64,000 nucleotides of DNA from Rebecca billardiae RCC1528 (GCA_965240325.2 OZ251251.1:744001-808000), one strand, 5' to 3'. Positions 40,704 to 49,606 are shown, numbered from the stretch's first letter. Notes: generated by a model not told the origin, from the letters alone. Program-made: numbers and translations.

Positions 40704-41044
40704 GCTGCTCCGCGGCCGTGCGCGCGGGGTGTGCTCGCGGTCCGGCGCGCGCGAGGAGCGACGGGGCCTGCCTCGGTGCAAGCAAGCGCAGCCTTGTGGG
40801 CGGCCCGCTGACTGACGGAGGGGGGAACCACCAATGATTGCCTCTTGCCAGCGTCGTCCACCAGGGCGCAGCAGTAACGAACTAACGACAGGCCGATGCT
40901 CGGAGGCTCGATACGTGCGAATAATACGTGCGAGCCGCACGTACCCCATCAGTTACTCCAGCCGCCCCCCTGCACGCACGCGCGCGAGTCGCTCCGGCAG
41001 GGCGTGCGGCGTGAGTGGCGTCCGCCCGGGGCGTAGCGGACGGC

Positions 41045-42805
41045 ATGGACGTCGACGAAGGACAACTCGCACCGGCGCATGAGGCACCAGCCGACCCCTC
41101 CGCCAATGAGCGGCACAATGATGTGCAGGAGGAGAACACGGCCGACATGACCGACATCAACAATCTGGAAAGCAGGGGCGGAGCTAGCGGCTCTGCCTCG
41201 CGCTCGGGGGCGACTGGGGCTAGCGGTCCCGGTCGCTCTACCGCAACCGGCCCAGAGGGCCGTATCCCGACACACGAGGTGCCCAACATGCTCAACGAGC
41301 GCATCGACACGACCGCGCTCGTGATGGCGTACGAACAGGCCCCCCACATCGTCCAGTGCTATGATAAGGTGCTCAAGGCAGCGGCTGAGGGCCGGCAGGA
41401 GCAGGTGCTTGCGACCCTCGAGACGGCGGTCGCCGGCCGGGTGGCAGACCTGAATGCCAAGCTGCAGGCTGAGGCCGGGCAGGGCAACGCCAAACGCGCG
41501 CGCGCCGGCGTCTCCTCGTTGGAGGAGGGCGCGCTAACCGCGCGCGACGAGATGTTGGAAGATGATGCGCTCGCAGCCGCGTTCGACCTGGGGCAGCTCA
41601 CGTCGCTCGTGGCGACCTCGCAGCCGGTGGTGCTCCGCCTGTGCGTCGTCATACCAGGCAAGCACTCTGAGCCCCATGCTGTCGAGTTCGGCAAGCAGTT
41701 CAACTCGTTCATGCACGAGCAGTGCGCGGCGCTGCAAGCTGCATGCACGATGGAGCAGCACTCCGTCCTCCTCCCGGGTTGGAAGTACTATACGGAGGAA
41801 ATGATCACCGTGCAGGGCCTCGCCGCGCACGACCTCGTATACCTGATCCTTAGCCGCATCAAGTGCGACCAGCAGATCGACTTTCTGAAGCCGCCGCCGG
41901 TCGTCTCGAAAGTCCTCCGGCACTCGTCGATCATCCCGTTTGCGCTGAGCAAGGCGGAATACCCGAAGTCGGTGCAGCTCGAATCGGGCACAGTGCGCTT
42001 CGACGTCAGCTGGCCGGAGGGCATGCTAGTGGCCGTGATGCGCCAGGGGAAACCCGAGCTCGAGATCTTCAGCCCGTCAACGGTGAGGGCGCACGGAACG
42101 CTGTTCAAGCTGACGATGTCCACCGCAGCAAACCGAGGCATGGCAGCCGCAGGCGTCCCGCAGGAGGTGTTCCGCTTCACGGCGGCAGACCAGACGTTCT
42201 ACCAGTCACGTAAGACCGGCCAGCTCAGCTTCCCCCTCGGCCCAGGGGCGTTCAAGCCGATCGTCACCGGGTACATGCACATGCATCGGCTCTTCCGCTT
42301 GGAGAACTGGCCCGGTATGCAGCAAGACTCCAAGGCCTTCACCAAGGGCGCCGGGAGCGTCGGTGTGATCGGCGCCCAGGGCGTCAACATCTTCTTCACA
42401 CAGATGGGCGGGCCCACAACCCCGTGCCTCCTCTCGACCACCTTCTCTTTCGAGGGTGGTAACCAGGACATGATCACCCTGGCCAACCTCGACAGCAAGA
42501 TCAAGGGCTGGTGTGTGGCGGACCTCTGCTCCTCTGCCCTCAGATGCGGCGAGCAGTGCCCGAGGCTGGACTGCTCGCTCAAGCATGCCAGCCCAAAAGG
42601 GGGGCAGACCCCATTCAAAAAGTCGGAGTGCGGTGCACTCATCTCGCTGGCGCAGCAGGCGGCTGTGCAGGGATCGCTCGCGCTCCAGGCATCGGCCCCG
42701 CCGGCGAAACACCTCCAGCTCGCGAAGGCGGTCGCTGCCTTCGTCGAAAGGCGGGGCAGCACTGCTGCTGAGGCAGGCATGTCCAATCTGCAGGTCTCTC
42801 AGTAA
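41045..42805 (+). CDS. LINE ORF1 protein (putative nucleic-acid chaperone with C-terminal CCCH-like finger)
   Basis: ~586-aa ORF immediately upstream of the RT ORF. Disordered N-terminus, helical segment with an NLS-like KRAR, and C-terminal CVADLCSSALRCGEQCPRLDCSLKH. Confidence 0.8.
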   Translation: MDVDEGQLAPAHEAPADPSANERHNDVQEENTADMTDINNLESRGGASGSASRSGATGASGPGRSTATGPEGRIPTHEVPNMLNERIDTTALVMAYEQAPHIVQCYDKVLKAAAEGRQEQVLATLETAVAGRVADLNAKLQAEAGQGNAKRARAGVSSLEEGALTARDEMLEDDALAAAFDLGQLTSLVATSQPVVLRLCVVIPGKHSEPHAVEFGKQFNSFMHEQCAALQAACTMEQHSVLLPGWKYYTEEMITVQGLAAHDLVYLILSRIKCDQQIDFLKPPPVVSKVLRHSSIIPFALSKAEYPKSVQLESGTVRFDVSWPEGMLVAVMRQGKPELEIFSPSTVRAHGTLFKLTMSTAANRGMAAAGVPQEVFRFTAADQTFYQSRKTGQLSFPLGPGAFKPIVTGYMHMHRLFRLENWPGMQQDSKAFTKGAGSVGVIGAQGVNIFFTQMGGPTTPCLLSTTFSFEGGNQDMITLANLDSKIKGWCVADLCSSALRCGEQCPRLDCSLKHASPKGGQTPFKKSECGALISLAQQAAVQGSLALQASAPPAKHLQLAKAVAAFVERRGSTAAEAGMSNLQVSQ

Positions 42806-42826
42806 GACCTTAGCCGACCACATTAA

Positions 42827-45800
42827 ATGGCAGCGGCACTTGCTCTGATGGCAGGACAGGGTGATGATGGCCAGGCAGCGGCGGCTGGTGCAGCAGGAGT
42901 AGCATCACCGCTGCACTACCAGTACAGCCACGCTGACATCTCGTATGCATACTGCAATGTTGGGGGAGCAGGTGGGGCTGACCCCTCTGTACGGCGGGGT
43001 GACATCGCCACTTGGATTCGAGCAGTGGGGACACCCGATATTGTCTTTTTGGTGGAGACCCAAATGCCTGCGCACCAGGTAGTACGGTGGGCCAAGTCGT
43101 TCCCGGAGTATACGGTACACGCAGAACACGCCCGCGACAGGCGCAAGGGCGAAAAAGGTGCCAGGGCAGGGTGTGCCATCCTGGTACGCAAGGCGCACGT
43201 AGGTGCGCCCAAATCGCTCCATCTCAACAATGTGTGCAGAGGCAGGGAGATACTATACCCAGAGCTGGCAGGGCACATAATTTCTGGGGAAATCACACTA
43301 TGCAGGGGCAATGGGCAGGCTATCCCTATGTGGGTGTGCTGCTTCTACAACCCGCATGATGAGGAGCGGCAGCACCTGCTGCTTCCACACATAGTCAACC
43401 ACCTTCGGACAGGCACATGCATAGGCCTTCCCACAGCTGGCAACATGAGGACTCATGCTGTGCACGTAGCCAGGCATGCTGCCAGGCTGCAATTGGTGGC
43501 ATGCGATGGAAATGGGCACATGCACGACAGCAACGCAGGGGAGGGGGCTACTCCCAAGGTAGTTTTCCGCACATATATGACGGACGCTGACCACCTCTTC
43601 AACCAAATACCCAGCACCACACGATGGGACACGCTCGAAAGGCCCACATTCATCACTGCACACAGGGAGGACGGCAACGGGGCGGATCGCTCTGTGATTG
43701 ACTACATATTCTCCAACATGGACACAGTTGGGCACACCGGACACATGGACATATCGGAAAAGGCCACACTGCGAATGCCAGGAGCACACATCCCAATATA
43801 TGGCCGGATTCACTCGGTGGCACTCCGCGGCGCTGCTGCAGTACTGGCCTCACCTGTGCAACCTCCCAGGCACATACGTGTGGACCTGGGAAAGACGTCA
43901 CCTGACTGGAATAAAGCCAAACAACTACTTGCGATGTGGATGGAGGGCCTGCCACCACACATTGCGGACTTTGCTGAGGCTCCTGTGCCGGCACATATGC
44001 TGGTGCAACCTTCGCTGGTGACGACTGCAGCCACTGCGCTGACAGCACTGAGACACCTGAATACACTGGCCACCAGGGACATGGCAACTGCACTGGAGCA
44101 ACCCAGTGTGTATGACGGACAGCCAGACACTCCCCTGAAGATCCGACCAGCCACAGCGGGCCAAGCAGCGGGTCAACACAAATCCAAGGCAGATGCTGCC
44201 TCTGCTGCGCTGCATGCGGGCGATATTCTGGCTAACAGAACAGCTGCTGGGCTGCCAGCTGGCCCAGCAGTGCTCAGAGCAGTGCGTAGGTACGAGCGCA
44301 CCTGGGGCACTGGAGCTGCACAGTCCCAGCACTGGATACAAGTGGCAATGGGGCCGCACGGACAGGTGCCAGTAGGGCCATTTCTGTCCCACCAGCGTTG
44401 GAGACAAATCGTGCAGCAGCAATGCAGGACAAGCCGCGCACAAGTGAAAGCTGTGTGGCAGCAGCAGGCCGATGAACAAAAGAGGGCGTGGTTCGCCAAA
44501 GTCAAGGTTGAGACCAAAAAGAACTCGCACAAACTGCGTGTCATGGTGTATGCCAAGGACCCCATCACACTGCCGACCATCGTCAGACGGAGCGATGGGG
44601 CACTGGCCACCAGCGTTGACGATGTGAAATCGGAGTACAGGGGGCACTACCAGGGCCTCCTGGAGCGACAATACACTCGGCCAGAGGGCAGGCCTCCTTG
44701 GCACGCTGGCAGTCACCTGTGGCACGACATCAGGGCCGCATGGCGTACTGAGCAGGGGGACGCATATGTCACTGCCCTCGGAGCGCCACCCACTCCCGCA
44801 CAAATACGACACATCATCACATCTGAGGTGGGAGGCAACTCGGCGCCTGGTCCAGATGGCATACAGTACAATGTCCTCAAGCTCTTGGAAGGACACCATG
44901 CCGAGCGCGACGAGCCGGTACAGCCAAGCGGCACGCGCACACACAGGCAGCACGCTGCACGGCAGACTGGTACCCAGCAGGGGGCAGCCAGGGGACAGGG
45001 GGCAGGGCACCCTGGCCCGATCGCCACTATTATATCTAATCTCTGTGCAGTCATGTACGCGACAGGGACTCTGCTGGACGGACTCCAGCAAGGTGAGGTG
45101 GTCTCATTACACAAGCAAGGGGATATGCACGTGCTCGGGAATTACAGGGGCATAACACTCAACAGTGTGGTGTACAAAATCATGGCAAGACACCAAAACA
45201 ACGTCATGCAAGCTGCGTCCGACAGGCTCAGGCTGATCGAGCCGGAACAGGCTGCCAGCAGAGAGGGGGGGCAAGTGGTACAGCAAGTCGCTGTCTTTGC
45301 CAACGTGGTGGCCGATGCACACCGTTCCAGGCGCACGCTGTTTTGTGCACTGATGGACATTCAAAAAGCCTTCGACACTGTGCCATACCAAGGCATTGAG
45401 GATGGCTTCCGCAGCCATGGGTACCCAGCCATGTTCTATACCCTCATGCGCTCCTTGGGAGAGGGGCATGATGTGGTGGTGAGGACACCATACGGGCCCA
45501 CCGATAGTGTACGCTTACGGTGTGGCACGAAGCAAGGTGACCCTGCCAGCTCCACTAAGTTCTGCCTGTTCATCAACATGTTCCTCAGGTACCTGAAGAG
45601 CAGGCATGGCGGGTACCATGTACAGTCCAAATGCAGCTCAGACGACGCGGACGCTGCTGCAGGGCAGGTGACAGTGGTGGCCACTGCTATCATGGACGAT
45701 ATCAATTTGTACGCGCACAGCAGAGCAGACATCACAGCCATGATGCAGGACCTCATCGACTTTTTGTGGTACTATGATATGGAGCCCAACTACCCCAAAT

Positions 45801-48800
45801 CCAAGGTGGCAGTGTATGTGCCCCCTGGGCACGCACAGGTGGACCCAATACAGGTCATCAACAGGGCAACTGGACAAGCTGCCCTCATAGACACGTTGCA
45901 GGATGGCGAATACTTCACGTATGCAGGGGTGGTGACCAACATTCACCTGGCAACGGACAGGATGTTCGCCAGTCTCAAGGCCAGAGTGGCCAAAGCCGCC
46001 GCGCGGGTGCAGGCAGCTGACTGCTGTACCGAGACCAAAAAGCTGCTCACTGTGTGGGATGTCACGTCGATATTATTCTACTTCTGCGAGGTGGTTGGCA
46101 TGTCCAGGGGCAGACTCAACCAGCTGCAGAGCCTCATGGTGGAGCCAGTGGTCAGGAGTGCTGCCCTGCCAGGGCGCATCGCATACGAGGCAGCGTGCTT
46201 TCCTCCCCAGTTCCTGGGCCTCGGCCTCATCAATCTACATGCGCACCTGGAGAGTGTCCAGGCACACGCGTACTACCACTTCCTGGCAGATGACCCACAT
46301 GGGCTATGTGCGCGCACGTCCATGGCAGCCATGGGTGCCCTGCAATCAGTCGAGCACCCGGCGCGGGCGCGCGTACGCGGCGCTTCTACATTTGCCTCCA
46401 CCATCGTCACCGGGAGAAATTCTGTACGACGCATGGGGTGGGCACTGCTCCCATCCGAAGTGAACCTCGGCAGCAAGCTGATGCAGCAGCTGGCCCCCGG
46501 TCTCGGGATGCTGGCCACAAACCGGACCCACAGGGCATATACAAGACTCGCAGCAATGCCAGGGGCAGCTGCCCTCCCCTGCTTGGCACCACGCGGCCTC
46601 CCTGACGCGAACGGAGAGATGCTCAGCCGGATCGAGCACTCACTGGTGAACGGTACCCAGCACGTGTTGCTAGGTGTGCTCATGCAGCAGCCACCAAGAC
46701 AGATGGTCTCCACTGCGTTCTATGCTGAGCTGTCCTCACTGCCACATAGGTCCCGCCCGGCGGTGATACTGGCAGTGAGGGATATGCTGAGGGCAGTCCT
46801 GACCGACCAGAGCTACTACAGGTACCTGGGGCACGTGCCTGTCGCCAAGCGCACTATCTGTGATCCACCCAATCCCCGCCATCTGCCGGCACTTCCTGTA
46901 CCTGGCATGCTAATGGTGGCCACTGACGGCTCATTCGATGCAGAGAACGGACAGGCTGCATGTGCCTTTTCCTTCTTCAGTGGCAACAATTACACTGCCC
47001 CTGTGCATGTGTATTGCTCCAAGTTCGAGGGGCACCAGGCACCAGGCCCAGCCGAATTCATGGCCATCACCGATGCATTGGTGCAGATAGACCCCACCGC
47101 CAACCTGCTGGTGTGCACTGACCTGCAGGAAATGGTAAAGGCCGCCGAAATGTGGCAAAACGACCCCTGGGACCGACGGCTGCGGCAGGGGCACCACGCG
47201 TACGCACCATACATCGCCAGGGTCATGAGCCTGGTGGGCTGGCGCCGCTTGATGCATGGCAGCACCACTTCATTTGAGCATGTCAAGGCGCACTCTGCTG
47301 ACGATGCTGCAGCGCTACACCTCAGCCTCACTCACACTCAGGGGGACCATCACTGCACTGTCAGCCAACACAGTGTGGCGGCTTTGCGCCAAGCAGGGAT
47401 GAACCCCAAAACCCTGCTCAACGCATGCAGCGATGCTGGGGCCAAGCTATGCTGCTCTGACCCCACAACCCCCTGTGTGACTCACAAGAGAGGTGGCCAC
47501 CCAAATGCGGGTTCTCATGCGCTGATACAGCTGGCCAACGGAGAGCCAGTGGCAGGCAGAATCAAGCCCCTTGTGTATGACAGTGTGCTGTCACAAAGGG
47601 CAACGCACCTGCAAGCCACCAAGTCCAGCTGTGACTTGGTGGGTGAATGGACTGGCGTGTGGCCAGAGGCCTCCACTGGCATCCTACGGACCTGGCAGGC
47701 CAGCACTGTGCCTGCCTACTACATACTCCACCACGGATATGAGTTCCTGCAGCCGGCTGCCCTGCGAGACCCGACGTTGTTATCTGTGCGATTCCAGTCC
47801 GGGGCTGCATTTAGCGATGCCTGCCCCCTCTGTGATCATACTCCACTGCTACATCCAGCGCCAGATACTGAACACCACCTCTTCTCCGAGTGCCCTGAGG
47901 TCGATGCCTACCGCGAGGCTGCTGCCAGAAGCATATCGCATATAATTGAGCCCTTCATGCAGGGACAGGCTGCAGCATGGAACTTGGCGCGACATGTGTG
48001 CTCTGGGGCTGCCCTCTTGGGCAGGGTGCCCAGCACACTGAAGACCACTGTGGGGGGCAACGTGCATCTCGGCAGGACCATGCACGTGGCCTTACTGAAG
48101 GCAGGGCTAGGCATCATGCAGGCCCGCAAGGACGTGGACTCCCAGCTGTCAAAGGCAGGGCGTCTCTTCCGACATGCCAGGGAGCTTCGGCCGCCGCCTG
48201 GGCACGACCAGGGGGGGCAGCCCCCGCCCCCACAGGCACAGGCAGGCCCAGGAGGGGTGATTGCCATGAATAATCAGTTACAGGGACCACCTGTCATCCA
48301 GCAGCAACCCCCTGCCCAGGCTGGCCAGGGCTGGCAGGCAGGCGCGGGGCAGGCCAACCTGCACCAGCCAATAGCGCGCGGTCACCACGTGCGCCCTCAG
48401 CTACTCTTGCGGGCATGGCCCCTACAGCGTGCTCGCCCCCTCCCTATGGTGATTGCGTGGCCTCTGCAGCCTGCCACACCTCTTGTGGCATGGCCGCTCC
48501 AATATGTTACCCCACTGGCTCGCAGCGATGTGCGTCCGTCGGACAATGTGTTGACACATGGGGGCCCTGAGATTGAGGCAGACCCTGCTGCGGGCAGTCG
48601 CACTGGTCACGGAGCTCACAACGGCATTACACAGTCAGACACTGGACAGCAGGCCACACAGCCACCTGCTGGCTCTGCCAAGACACTGGCAGCCCCCAGG
48701 CGCAGGCTGCCTCCTCCTAGTCAAGCTCAGCAAGACAGCCCCCCGCCCAAACGACACTGCCCACCCCACCAGGCAAATGTGCCTATCCTAACACCAACTG

Positions 48801-49108
48801 GCAGGCAGGCTCAGCCTGCGCAACGAAGTATGCAACCCCCTGCAAAGAGCAGCAGAAAGAGGCGCGCAAACGACACCTCCCCAGGCGTATTAGCCATCGC
48901 CACCACTCTGCTTGCGTCCTACAGCGGCCCACGCCCTGACTTGATGCCCGATATCGCACACATGTCTGACATGACACCATCTGCCTCCATAGCAGCACGA
49001 GTGAAATACAGGCGCCTCACTGCCAGGACCAGTGGCCCAGACCCCGGCCCAGCTACTGGGCTCGCTGACAGCCCCCTCCGTCCCCTCCCCCGCGCAGGGA
49101 TCGGCTAG
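42827..49108 (+). CDS. LINE ORF2 polyprotein: APE endonuclease, reverse transcriptase, RNase H, CCHC finger, long C-terminal tail
   Basis: APE: CNVGG, FLVET, YNPH, ACDGN, IDYIF, GAH. RT: APGPDGI, NYRGITL, DIQKAFDTV, GTKQGDP, IMDD, NYPKS, TYAGV. RNase H: ATDGS, AEFMAI, CTD, HVKAHS, NACSD. Finger: CPLC...EHHLFSEC. Confidence 0.95.
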   Translation: MAAALALMAGQGDDGQAAAAGAAGVASPLHYQYSHADISYAYCNVGGAGGADPSVRRGDIATWIRAVGTPDIVFLVETQMPAHQVVRWAKSFPEYTVHAEHARDRRKGEKGARAGCAILVRKAHVGAPKSLHLNNVCRGREILYPELAGHIISGEITLCRGNGQAIPMWVCCFYNPHDEERQHLLLPHIVNHLRTGTCIGLPTAGNMRTHAVHVARHAARLQLVACDGNGHMHDSNAGEGATPKVVFRTYMTDADHLFNQIPSTTRWDTLERPTFITAHREDGNGADRSVIDYIFSNMDTVGHTGHMDISEKATLRMPGAHIPIYGRIHSVALRGAAAVLASPVQPPRHIRVDLGKTSPDWNKAKQLLAMWMEGLPPHIADFAEAPVPAHMLVQPSLVTTAATALTALRHLNTLATRDMATALEQPSVYDGQPDTPLKIRPATAGQAAGQHKSKADAASAALHAGDILANRTAAGLPAGPAVLRAVRRYERTWGTGAAQSQHWIQVAMGPHGQVPVGPFLSHQRWRQIVQQQCRTSRAQVKAVWQQQADEQKRAWFAKVKVETKKNSHKLRVMVYAKDPITLPTIVRRSDGALATSVDDVKSEYRGHYQGLLERQYTRPEGRPPWHAGSHLWHDIRAAWRTEQGDAYVTALGAPPTPAQIRHIITSEVGGNSAPGPDGIQYNVLKLLEGHHAERDEPVQPSGTRTHRQHAARQTGTQQGAARGQGAGHPGPIATIISNLCAVMYATGTLLDGLQQGEVVSLHKQGDMHVLGNYRGITLNSVVYKIMARHQNNVMQAASDRLRLIEPEQAASREGGQVVQQVAVFANVVADAHRSRRTLFCALMDIQKAFDTVPYQGIEDGFRSHGYPAMFYTLMRSLGEGHDVVVRTPYGPTDSVRLRCGTKQGDPASSTKFCLFINMFLRYLKSRHGGYHVQSKCSSDDADAAAGQVTVVATAIMDDINLYAHSRADITAMMQDLIDFLWYYDMEPNYPKSKVAVYVPPGHAQVDPIQVINRATGQAALIDTLQDGEYFTYAGVVTNIHLATDRMFASLKARVAKAAARVQAADCCTETKKLLTVWDVTSILFYFCEVVGMSRGRLNQLQSLMVEPVVRSAALPGRIAYEAACFPPQFLGLGLINLHAHLESVQAHAYYHFLADDPHGLCARTSMAAMGALQSVEHPARARVRGASTFASTIVTGRNSVRRMGWALLPSEVNLGSKLMQQLAPGLGMLATNRTHRAYTRLAAMPGAAALPCLAPRGLPDANGEMLSRIEHSLVNGTQHVLLGVLMQQPPRQMVSTAFYAELSSLPHRSRPAVILAVRDMLRAVLTDQSYYRYLGHVPVAKRTICDPPNPRHLPALPVPGMLMVATDGSFDAENGQAACAFSFFSGNNYTAPVHVYCSKFEGHQAPGPAEFMAITDALVQIDPTANLLVCTDLQEMVKAAEMWQNDPWDRRLRQGHHAYAPYIARVMSLVGWRRLMHGSTTSFEHVKAHSADDAAALHLSLTHTQGDHHCTVSQHSVAALRQAGMNPKTLLNACSDAGAKLCCSDPTTPCVTHKRGGHPNAGSHALIQLANGEPVAGRIKPLVYDSVLSQRATHLQATKSSCDLVGEWTGVWPEASTGILRTWQASTVPAYYILHHGYEFLQPAALRDPTLLSVRFQSGAAFSDACPLCDHTPLLHPAPDTEHHLFSECPEVDAYREAAARSISHIIEPFMQGQAAAWNLARHVCSGAALLGRVPSTLKTTVGGNVHLGRTMHVALLKAGLGIMQARKDVDSQLSKAGRLFRHARELRPPPGHDQGGQPPPPQAQAGPGGVIAMNNQLQGPPVIQQQPPAQAGQGWQAGAGQANLHQPIARGHHVRPQLLLRAWPLQRARPLPMVIAWPLQPATPLVAWPLQYVTPLARSDVRPSDNVLTHGGPEIEADPAAGSRTGHGAHNGITQSDTGQQATQPPAGSAKTLAAPRRRLPPPSQAQQDSPPPKRHCPPHQANVPILTPTGRQAQPAQRSMQPPAKSSRKRRANDTSPGVLAIATTLLASYSGPRPDLMPDIAHMSDMTPSASIAARVKYRRLTARTSGPDPGPATGLADSPLRPLPRAGIG

Positions 49109-49606
49109 TGGCTGGCCCTCTGCCCACACTGGGGCGCCCTAGGGGGTGCCCAGTCTGCCGACTCGGCTCAAACTCGATGATCTCGAATTGCAAGGCAGTG
49201 CACTGCTGGTACCTGGGACCACCCCACAGTGTTGGGCTTGTATGCTGTCGGCAATGGCATACCCCCGCCCCCTCTGGAGGCGGGCTGTCCACAGCGGAGT
49301 GGTGTCAAGGCACTCGGTGTATCGGTCAGTGGTTTGAGGTTGGGTGAGGGTGGTGGTTGGTTGGGGGCTGGCCAGGGTAGGGCTGGAGGCTTCGGCCGCC
49401 AGTCTGATCACCCGGAGCCCGTTATAAAGGGGAATTTAAAGGGTAAAGGCCATGCGCTGGGGAGTAATCGCCGAGCCGCTGCGCGTATCCATCAAGCGGA
49501 TGGGATCATGATACGCCCAACGGCAATGCCGCTCAGGAACCGGCCAATGGAAATGCGCAGCAGCAGCTTTTCGTCCCACGCGCGCACGAGCCCTGAACCT
49601 CACGCG

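What the first reader, a model, noticed from the sequence alone, without database searches (positions are those of the whole stretch)
40828..49428. Intact, divergent RNase H-bearing LINE: candidate new non-LTR retrotransposon lineage
Seen: two uninterrupted ORFs (586 and 2093 aa) with domain order APE-RT-(~300-aa linker)-RNase H-CCHC-(~300-aa tail), and no poly(A) tail. Known: RNase H occurs in I-group LINEs, Proto1 and some plant/oomycete L1s; the LLGRVP...GIMQARK segment after the CCHC finger resembles L1-group C-termini. Inference: the unusual ORF1, deviant catalytic motifs, motif-bearing tail and structured 3' UTR together do not fit a textbook clade. The lack of stops or frameshifts suggests it is young or active.
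Basis: partly seen in the sequence, partly recalled or inferred. Interest (0 to 1): 0.85.

Follow-up and report, generated by a model that had tools for sequence, protein, structure and literature searches.

The report
Young RNase H-bearing LINE in an alga
This is a real, intact and very recently active jumping gene of the LINE type in a GC-rich, probably haptophyte, algal genome; it is a new family inside a well-supported but so far unnamed group of environmental LINEs, and its design (endonuclease, reverse transcriptase, RNase H, zinc knuckle) is shared with that group rather than unique.

Summary
Two uninterrupted ORFs (586 aa from the ATG; 2093 aa) encode APE, RT, a conserved linker, RNase H, a CCHC knuckle with a helical domain, and a disordered tail.

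The ends need correcting. The 3' end is ...GGGGAATTTA plus 0-14 A, at about 49438-49441, not 49428. The 5' end is uncertain; shared sequence starts near 40929, not 40828.

- **Activity.** About 410 copies of the 3' terminus exist in the 72-Mb genome. They are extremely 5'-truncated (median 73 bp in 20 unselected copies) and some are 99.9-100% identical. ORF2 dN/dS is 0.15 against a 95% subfamily.
- **"Deviant" motifs.** IMDD, and GAH in place of SDH, vary on traits of the wider clade (xMDD; STH/TPH).
- **Phylogeny.** The RT sits on a long branch. It is sister (100/97) to other LINE families of the same genome plus three metagenomic proteins. All lie inside a 100/100 clade of unnamed environmental APE-RT-RNH-CCHC elements, separate from an L1 reference clade.
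- **Not plant-type L1, not Dualen.** The RNase H is not plant-L1 type. No restriction-like endonuclease is present.
- **Untested.** I could not test membership of Repbase clades such as Proto1, Nimb or Dualen.

Verdict: a new family of a known kind; clade-level novelty is possible but unproven. Other readers of the scan had already noted parts of this stretch.

The parts
40929..41044 (+). 5' UTR. The start is uncertain.
41045..42805 (+). ORF1, 586 aa from the ATG (an in-frame GTG lies at 41015). It has an acidic, low-complexity N-terminus and an orphan body. A conserved C-x4-C-x9-C-x4-C-x3-H cluster near the C-terminus looks like a CCCH finger. The body (41308-42770) is unique to this copy in the assembly.
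42806..42826 (+). Inter-ORF spacer of 21 nt. ORF1 and ORF2 are in the same frame, separated by two TAA codons; the second abuts the ORF2 ATG (TAAATG).
42827..49108 (+). ORF2, 2093 aa, intact.
42938..43861 (+). APE endonuclease domain (about aa 38-345). N, E, Y, D-x-N and D motifs are present; the last motif reads GAH instead of SDH. dN/dS 0.05.
45017..46336 (+). Reverse transcriptase (aa 731-1170). Motif C is IMDD at 45689-45700. dN/dS 0.055.
46337..46891 (+). Conserved RT-RNase H linker (aa 1171-1355). It is alignable at 32% identity to metagenomic relatives. dN/dS 0.11.
46904..47461 (+). RNase H domain (aa 1360-1545). Catalytic residues D1367, E1410, D1432, H1489 and D1536 are present.
47822..48184 (+). 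CCHC knuckle (C1666, C1669, H1684, C1689) followed by an all-helical C-terminal domain to about aa 1786 (pLDDT 88-96). It has no beta-sheet and no PD-(D/E)xK motif, so it is not a restriction-like endonuclease.
48194..49105 (+). Pro/Gln/Ala-rich, presumably disordered tail of about 300 aa. No Pfam match. dN/dS 0.33.
49109..49441 (+). 3' UTR, ending ...CCCGTTATAAAGGGGAATTTA plus AAA in this copy. It includes a GC-rich UUCG hairpin about 40 nt from the end. Whole-UTR fold z-score is -1.95.

Best explanation
This is an autonomous, APE-type non-LTR retrotransposon (LINE) that has been transposing until very recently in this algal genome.

Inferred mechanism, from the established LINE pathway:
- The bicistronic RNA is translated into ORF1p and ORF2p. 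ORF1p is probably an RNA-binding protein with a CCCH-like Cys/His cluster.
- ORF2p recognises the element's own 3' UTR end rather than a poly(A) tail.
- Its APE domain nicks chromosomal DNA, and the RT copies the RNA from the nick (target-primed reverse transcription).
- The built-in RNase H, of cellular RNase H1 type, removes the RNA template.
- The CCHC knuckle and helical C-terminal domain hold nucleic acid.
- Reverse transcription usually aborts very early, leaving mostly 35-250-bp 3' fragments.
- Integration usually leaves no recognisable target-site duplication.

Shown here: the domains, catalytic residues, copy structure, youth and selection. Inferred: the steps of the mechanism.

Phylogenetically it is a new, fast-evolving family. 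Its nearest relatives are other LINE families of the same genome. It lies within a strongly supported clade of unnamed environmental APE-RT-RNase H-CCHC elements.
For: - Intact ORFs and domains.
- RNase H fold: TM 0.61-0.64 to E. coli RNase HI, VIA Z 13.9, and invariant D-E-D-H-D.
- At least 56 long matches, nearly all 5'-truncated and co-terminal at the 3' end.
- 410 copies of the 3' terminus against 0 for the control.
- 20 unselected copies have a median length of 73 bp.
- Several copies are 99.9-100% identical over up to 5.7 kb.
- dN/dS against the 95% subfamily is 0.15 overall (APE 0.05, RT 0.055, RNase H 0.16, tail 0.33).
- A nested 62-bp insertion has a clean 4-bp TSD.
- RT trees: the clade with the genome's own C5, C12 and C17 families plus P0002, P0003 and P0160 is supported 100/97. 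The enclosing 22-row clade is 100/100. The L1 reference clade (Juglans + Anolis) is separate, at 100/99.
- Relatives share the architecture.
Against: - No expression or de novo insertion data. The single public run found holds only three short low-depth contigs.
- TSDs are indistinguishable from chance in 30 copies, apart from one of 9 bp and one of 4 bp. The integration chemistry is therefore not fully LINE-typical.
- Pfam scores for APE and RNase H fall just under the gathering cut-offs.
- ORF1 has no homologue, no Pfam or PDB match and no confident fold, so its role is a guess.
- The ORF1-deleted subfamily also spread, so ORF1 may be dispensable in cis.
- The clade name is unresolved, because no Repbase references were available.
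Confidence: 0.88

Rival explanations
1. It belongs to an already named RNase H-bearing clade and is simply a new family of it. Candidates are the I group (Nimb, Tad1, Ingi, Outcast, Loner and others) and Proto1 of the L1 group.
For: - APE-RT-RNase H(-CCHC) is the published architecture of those clades (PMC4640811).
- The RNase H is of the cellular RNase H1 / PF00075 type.
- Atlas neighbours include arthropod APE-RT-RNase H clusters at a lower score.
- Clade-level RT identities of 25-35% are normal within named clades.
Against: - No sequence from a named organism falls inside its 100/100 clade among the relatives I could label.
- Fungal, insect, fish and dictyostelid LINEs fall elsewhere.
- Published dictyostelid APE-RT-RNase H elements could themselves not be placed in known RNase H-bearing clades (PMC5006619), so unnamed groups of this design exist.
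Confidence: 0.45
2. It is a Dualen/RandI-group element that has lost the C-terminal restriction-like endonuclease, and a protease. The P/Q-rich tail would be the remnant.
For: - Dualen is APE-RT-RNase H-CCHC-RLE (PMC5029228).
- This RT scores closer to R2 than to L1: 7e-11 against 0.047 for the single sequence, and 353 against 269 bits for the profile. That fits Dualen's mid position.
- The best non-RNase H structural match of the C-terminus is the R2 knuckle + RLE region, Z 7.8.
- Sister families in this genome carry extra C-terminal sequence with OTU-like Cys and His motifs by eye.
Against: - After the CCHC the model is all-helical at high pLDDT, with no beta-sheet and no PD-(D/E)xK motif.
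- None of the close relatives inspected shows an RLE.
- There are no long Dualen-4b-like duplications within 2-10 kb of 10 copies (PMC9977147).
- The tail is not (ATT)n (PMC3747384).
- Z 7.8 is within the noise range for helical models.
- Pfam and PDB sequence searches do not confirm OTU in the sisters.
Confidence: 0.12
3. It is an L1-clade element of the plant or oomycete RNase H-bearing kind.
For: - It has two ORFs, an APE, and a CCHC followed by a G-x-x-P motif reminiscent of zf-RVT C-termini. Relative P0007 hits zf-RVT weakly.
- There is a weak structural match to the human ORF2p C-terminus, Z 6.0.
Against: - The Juglans L1 + Anolis reference clade is separate (100/99).
- Human ORF2p is only a marginal sequence hit, E 0.047.
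- The RNase H matches PF00075, not the plant-L1 RVT_3 family.
- The CCHC lies after, not before, the RNase H.
- There is no poly(A) tail.
- ORF1 has no RRM, Transposase_22 or CCHC match.
Confidence: 0.05

Closest known systems
Sister LINE families of the same genome (C5-type, L029:2515-9024, ORF2 2170 aa; C12/C17-type, 2903-3371 aa) and metagenomic proteins P0002, P0003, P0160
   Same: APE-RT(-RNase H-like)-CCHC order; xMDD motif C; loss of Asp in the APE SDH motif. RT identity is 33-37%. The clade is supported 100/97.
   Different: They carry longer C-terminal extensions with OTU-like motifs (by eye only). They have no homologue of this ORF1. This family sits on a much longer branch (1.2-1.4 substitutions per site) and has Ile instead of Tyr/Phe/Cys in motif C.
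Unnamed environmental APE-RT-RNase H-CCHC elements (for example P0005, P0006, P0007, P0013, P0031, P0032; 1560-2295 aa)
   Same: Identical domain order, including the conserved RT-RNase H linker and the CCHC + G-x-x-P helical C-terminus. They share a 100/100 clade.
   Different: Only 26-32% RT identity. Most keep SDH and (F/L)ADD or FMDD. None has the 300-aa P/Q tail or this ORF1, as far as the contigs show.
Dictyostelid NLTR-A/NLTR-B (Spaller et al. 2016, PMC5006619)
   Same: APE-RT-RNase H LINEs of protists that the authors could not place in any known RNase H-bearing clade. A Polysphondylium violaceum APE-RT-RNase H protein (P0077) is among this element's relatives.
   Different: P0077 falls outside the 22-row clade. 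NLTRs target tRNA genes, and no such targeting is seen here. That P0077 is an NLTR is my inference and was not tested.
Dualen/RandI (Kojima and Fujiwara 2005)
   Same: APE, RT, RNase H and CCHC in the same order. Found in algae. The RT is nearer R2 than L1.
   Different: No restriction-like endonuclease, no long target duplications and no (ATT)n tail.
I-group LINEs (I, Tad1, Ingi, Nimb and others)
   Same: RNase H of cellular type downstream of the RT, and stringent 3'-end recognition without poly(A).
   Different: No reference sequences were available for a test. Elements with the Exo_endo_phos_2-type APE (insect, fish) and fungal LINEs fall in another clade.

Membership tests
APE-type non-LTR retrotransposon (LINE) | N-terminal APE endonuclease followed by a LINE-type RT in one ORF | tested here: met
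   Pfam finds RVT_1 at E 3e-17. Exo_endo_phos scores 21.2 bits here and 24.8 bits (above the cut-off) in the 95% subfamily. Motif alignment agrees.
APE-type non-LTR retrotransposon (LINE) | Many 5'-truncated copies that end at the same 3' terminus, with no terminal repeats | tested here: met
   No flank-to-flank repeats.
APE-type non-LTR retrotransposon (LINE) | Target-site duplications of variable length | tested here: inconclusive
   One 4-bp and one 9-bp TSD were found. The other 28 copies are not different from shuffled pairs.
L1 clade | RT groups with L1 references | tested here: not met
   Juglans L1 + Anolis form a separate 100/99 clade. Human ORF2p scores E 0.047 against 7e-11 for R2.
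L1 clade | Poly(A) or A-rich tail used for priming | tested here: not met
   The unique terminus GGGGAATTTA is followed by only 0-14 A.
Plant/oomycete RNase H-bearing L1 | Archaeal-like RNase H (Pfam RVT_3; Arg in place of the conserved His) | tested here: not met
   The domain matches PF00075, not PF13456. His1489 is conserved. The best PDB profile match is human RNase H1.
Dualen/RandI | Restriction-like (PD-(D/E)xK) endonuclease after the CCHC, in addition to APE | tested here: not met
   The model after the CCHC is all-helical at high confidence, with no PD...D/E...K motif. The same holds in relatives.
Dualen/RandI | RT groups with Dualen references | not testable with these tools
   No Dualen sequence is reachable. 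The founding paper (PMC1182223) is not held.
I group (RNase H-bearing APE LINEs) | Cellular-type RNase H downstream of the RT | tested here: met
I group (RNase H-bearing APE LINEs) | RT groups with I, Tad1, Ingi, Nimb, LOA or R1 references | not testable with these tools
   No labelled references. Fungal and arthropod LINEs of unknown clade fall elsewhere.
Proto1 | RT groups with Proto1 references | not testable with these tools
   Only the clade name appears in the held papers.

The most novel reading that the evidence does not exclude
This family, its sister families in the same genome and some 20-30 environmental sequences may form a distinct, still unnamed clade of APE-RT-RNase H-CCHC non-LTR retrotransposons of marine or protist hosts. 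The clade would be comparable in rank to Repbase clades, and this family would be a living, assayable member. That member tolerates a non-aromatic motif C (IMDD) and an APE without the penultimate Asp. It integrates mostly without target duplications.
Probability: 0.33. Interest if true: 0.55.

Novelty: new member of a known kind. Interest (0 to 1): 0.4.

Why it matters
- **Annotation.** It provides a complete, apparently competent LINE for a poorly annotated algal lineage. That is useful for repeat annotation, since about 410 mostly tiny fragments would otherwise be missed or mis-called.
- **RNase H-bearing LINEs.** It anchors a well-supported group of environmental RNase H-bearing LINEs to a real genome.
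- **Testable biochemistry.** Does an RT with IMDD, and an APE with GAH in place of SDH, work?
- **Integration.** Why is reverse transcription aborted after a few dozen nucleotides? How are insertions resolved without target duplications?
- **ORF1.** An ORF1-deleted subfamily that still spread is a natural test of whether ORF1 is needed in cis.

None of this overturns current views of LINE biology.

Tried and rejected
- Word-indexed protein search with ORF2 aa 1-1300 gave no hit at all, probably because low-complexity words swamped it. With a 60-sequence profile it gave only 8 hits.
- ORF1 has no Pfam, PDB or Atlas match. Its AlphaFold model failed (pLDDT 30), so no fold search was done.
- Expression: the only public run found holds under a tenth of the sampled words. 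When laid, it gave three contigs of 150-207 nt and no junction information. This says nothing about expression.
- Rfam found no family in the element.
- Long Dualen-like target duplications are absent within 2-10 kb. Short TSDs are not above chance.
- OTU protease in the sister families is seen by eye only; Pfam and PDB sequence searches were negative. There is no OTU remnant in this element's tail.
- The Dualen paper could not be read, and Proto1 is nowhere described in the held papers.
Host-gene capture as the origin of ORF1 is rejected as the main reading, because the 95% subfamily retains both ends of ORF1.
Full report
**What is there**

- ORF1 runs from 41015 (GTG) or 41045 (first ATG; 586 aa) to 42805. 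ORF2 runs from 42827 to 49108 (2093 aa). Both are uninterrupted.
- The two ORFs are in the same frame, separated by 21 nt that contain two TAA codons. The second TAA abuts the ORF2 ATG.
- The element sits about 220 bp upstream of the start of a minus-strand cNMP-binding protein kinase gene. It is about 170 bp upstream of a plus-strand 2OG-Fe(II) oxygenase gene. It therefore lies in a short divergent intergenic region.

**Domains**

- Pfam finds RVT_1 (aa 763-996, E 3e-17). RNase_H (aa 1362-1492, 24.3 bits) and Exo_endo_phos (aa 43-122, 21.2 bits) fall just under their cut-offs. The 95% subfamily's APE passes its cut-off (24.8 bits).
- An alignment of the RNase H-to-C-terminus region with 30 relatives has invariant D1367, E1410, D1432, H1489, D1536 and C1666, H1684, C1689.
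- An AlphaFold model of aa 1340-1790 (mean pLDDT 75.7) matches E. coli RNase HI (TM 0.61-0.64, probability 1.0). It also matches retroviral and human RNase H (VIA Z 13-14).
- After the CCHC the model is a confident all-helical domain. Its best matches are the knuckle/RLE region of R2 (Z 7.8 and 6.6) and the C-terminal part of human ORF2p (Z 6.0). All are within the range the tool calls unreliable for helical models. There is no beta-sheet and no PD-(D/E)xK motif, so there is no restriction-like endonuclease.
- The last 300 aa are P/Q/A-rich with no match.
- The RT-RNase H linker is conserved: 32% identity to P0001 across aa 918-1355, with profile hits in several relatives.

**Copies, ends and age**

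- The genome holds at least 56 longer matches, nearly all 5'-truncated and all ending at the query's last base.
- A 27-nt pattern from the terminus occurs 410 times, against 0 for the reversed control.
- Twenty unselected sites are 35-246 bp long (median 73 bp). Their tails have 0-14 A, sometimes with TTTA or TA stutter.
- Several copies are 99.9-100% identical to the window copy over up to 5.7 kb.
- At the 5' end, window 40828-40925 matches nothing else in the genome. The full-length copies of the 95% subfamily begin at a point that aligns to about window 40929. The true start is therefore unresolved.
- TSDs: a 62-bp copy nested in an older copy shows a clean 4-bp duplication, ACAA, when compared with the uninterrupted sequence. 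One other copy has a 9-bp TSD.
- Across 30 copies, the best junction matches are no longer than for shuffled flank pairs (mean 3.9 against 3.7).
- No long duplications occur within 2-3 kb of nine copies or within 10 kb of the window copy.

**Subfamilies and ORF1**

- Three 7.5-kb copies (C19, C21, C8; 99.8% identical to each other) share 95% identity with the window copy from ORF2 codon 6 onward. They have an intact 2073-aa ORF2.
- They lack the ORF1 body (window 41308-42770). They keep the first ~100 codons of ORF1, triplicated as ~175-bp tandem repeats, and its last ~35 nt. They are ORF1-deleted derivatives that still spread.
- The window copy is the only one in the assembly with the whole ORF1.
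- The only other relative of ORF1 is a fragment on C11: 56% aa and 71% nt identity over aa 321-596, dN/dS 0.59. It lies between two copies of an abundant ~1.1-kb repeat and is not followed by an ORF2.
- ORF1 has no Pfam, PDB or Atlas match, and its model failed. A C-x4-C-x9-C-x4-C-x3-H cluster is invariant between the two paralogues. I read it as a CCCH-like finger; that is inference.

**Selection**

Between the two subfamilies, ORF2 dN/dS is 0.15 overall.

| Region | dN/dS |
|---|---|
| APE | 0.05 |
| RT | 0.055 |
| Linker | 0.11 |
| RNase H | 0.16 |
| CCHC region | 0.17 |
| Tail | 0.33 |

The odd-looking APE and RT are therefore under strong constraint.

**Relatives**

- An exhaustive phmmer search of aa 600-1790 against 1.84 billion representatives gave 6697 hits. 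The best has only 31-32% identity (E 2.8e-47).
- Full-length relatives are 1560-2295 aa APE-RT-RNase H(-zf-RVT) proteins from metagenomes. Atlas clusters of 55-129 members show the same set of domains.
- Of 48 relatives with more than 600 aa after the RT, 39 have the RNase H and 29 the CCHC module.
- The closest relatives of all are other LINE families in the same genome, with RT identity of 33-37%.
- Motif C is xMDD across this sub-clade (YMDD, FMDD, CMDD; IMDD here). The APE SDH motif is STH, TPH or TDH in relatives and GAH here.

**Phylogeny**

- Trees were a quick 133-row tree and a careful 57-row IQ-TREE (LG+C20+F+G4).
- Window + 95% subfamily sit on a long branch (1.2-1.4).
- They are sister to {C5, C12, C17, P0002, P0003, P0160}, supported 100/97.
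- All lie within a 22-row clade (100/100; 31 rows in the larger tree) that holds only environmental and own-genome sequences.
- Juglans L1 + two Anolis proteins form a separate 100/99 clade.
- Batrachochytrium, Puccinia, wasp, fish and Polysphondylium sequences lie elsewhere.
- Deep nodes are poorly supported and the root is arbitrary.
- Against solved structures the RT is nearer R2 than human L1: 7e-11 against 0.047 for the single sequence, and 353 against 269 bits for the profile.

**Comparison with the literature**

- RNase H is reported in the I group, plant L1, Proto1 and Dualen (PMC4640811).
- Dualen is APE-RT-RNase H-CCHC-RLE (PMC5029228). It makes very long target duplications (PMC9977147) and has (ATT)n-type tails (PMC3747384). 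None of the last three traits is met here.
- Dictyostelid NLTR-A/B are APE-RT-RNase H elements that could not be placed in known RNase H-bearing clades (PMC5006619). Unplaced groups of this design are therefore already on record.

**Verdict**

- The thing is real, intact and recently active. It is a new family with some unusual but clade-typical motifs.
- The claim of a new lineage is plausible at about one in three, but untested.

Noticed in passing
L029:2515-9024 (G000:C5:282014-288523); L027+L028 (C12:1140224-1150336); L030+L031 (C17:675296-684004): Two further LINE families in the genome have intact giant ORF2s: 2170 aa in at least 6 loci, and 2903-3371 aa. They show APE, RT, an RNase H-like DGS..E..D motif and CCHC. 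Their C-terminal segments show OTU-protease-like Cys (G-x-N-C / G-D-C) and His (G-H-Y) motifs by eye. Pfam and PDB sequence searches do not confirm OTU.
   Followed up: partly
L012:1359-8836 (C19), L013, L014 (C21, C8): The ORF1-deleted 95% subfamily has three 99.8%-identical 7.5-kb copies. Each has three ~175-bp tandem repeats of the ORF1 N-terminal coding region and an intact 2073-aa ORF2.
   Followed up: partly
L024:950-4849 (G000:C11:2667449-2671348): A fragment homologous to the C-terminal half of ORF1 lies between two direct copies of an abundant ~1.1-1.27-kb repeat. That repeat has at least 80 copies, many in clusters on C7, C11, C13 and C22. This looks like a captured or composite arrangement.
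   Followed up: no
G000:C5:2830406-2836984: Four copies of the LINE 3' terminus lie at an exact 2184-bp spacing. This is a tandemly duplicated unit that contains a LINE fragment.
   Followed up: no
window 40706 (minus strand) and 49607 (plus strand): The element lies between the start codons of two divergent host genes. One is a cNMP-binding protein kinase beginning MGCGAS (a myristoylation-like start). The other is a 2OG-Fe(II) oxygenase. Without the element the intergenic gap would be only about 400 bp.
   Followed up: partly
L054 (G000:C1:1759831-1761417): Two LINE 3' termini lie almost back to back: ...GGGGAATTTATAAAAAAAA followed directly by CCGGAGCCCGTTATAAAGGGGAATTTAAAAA. This suggests a tiny second insertion, or template re-priming, at the tail.
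   Followed up: no
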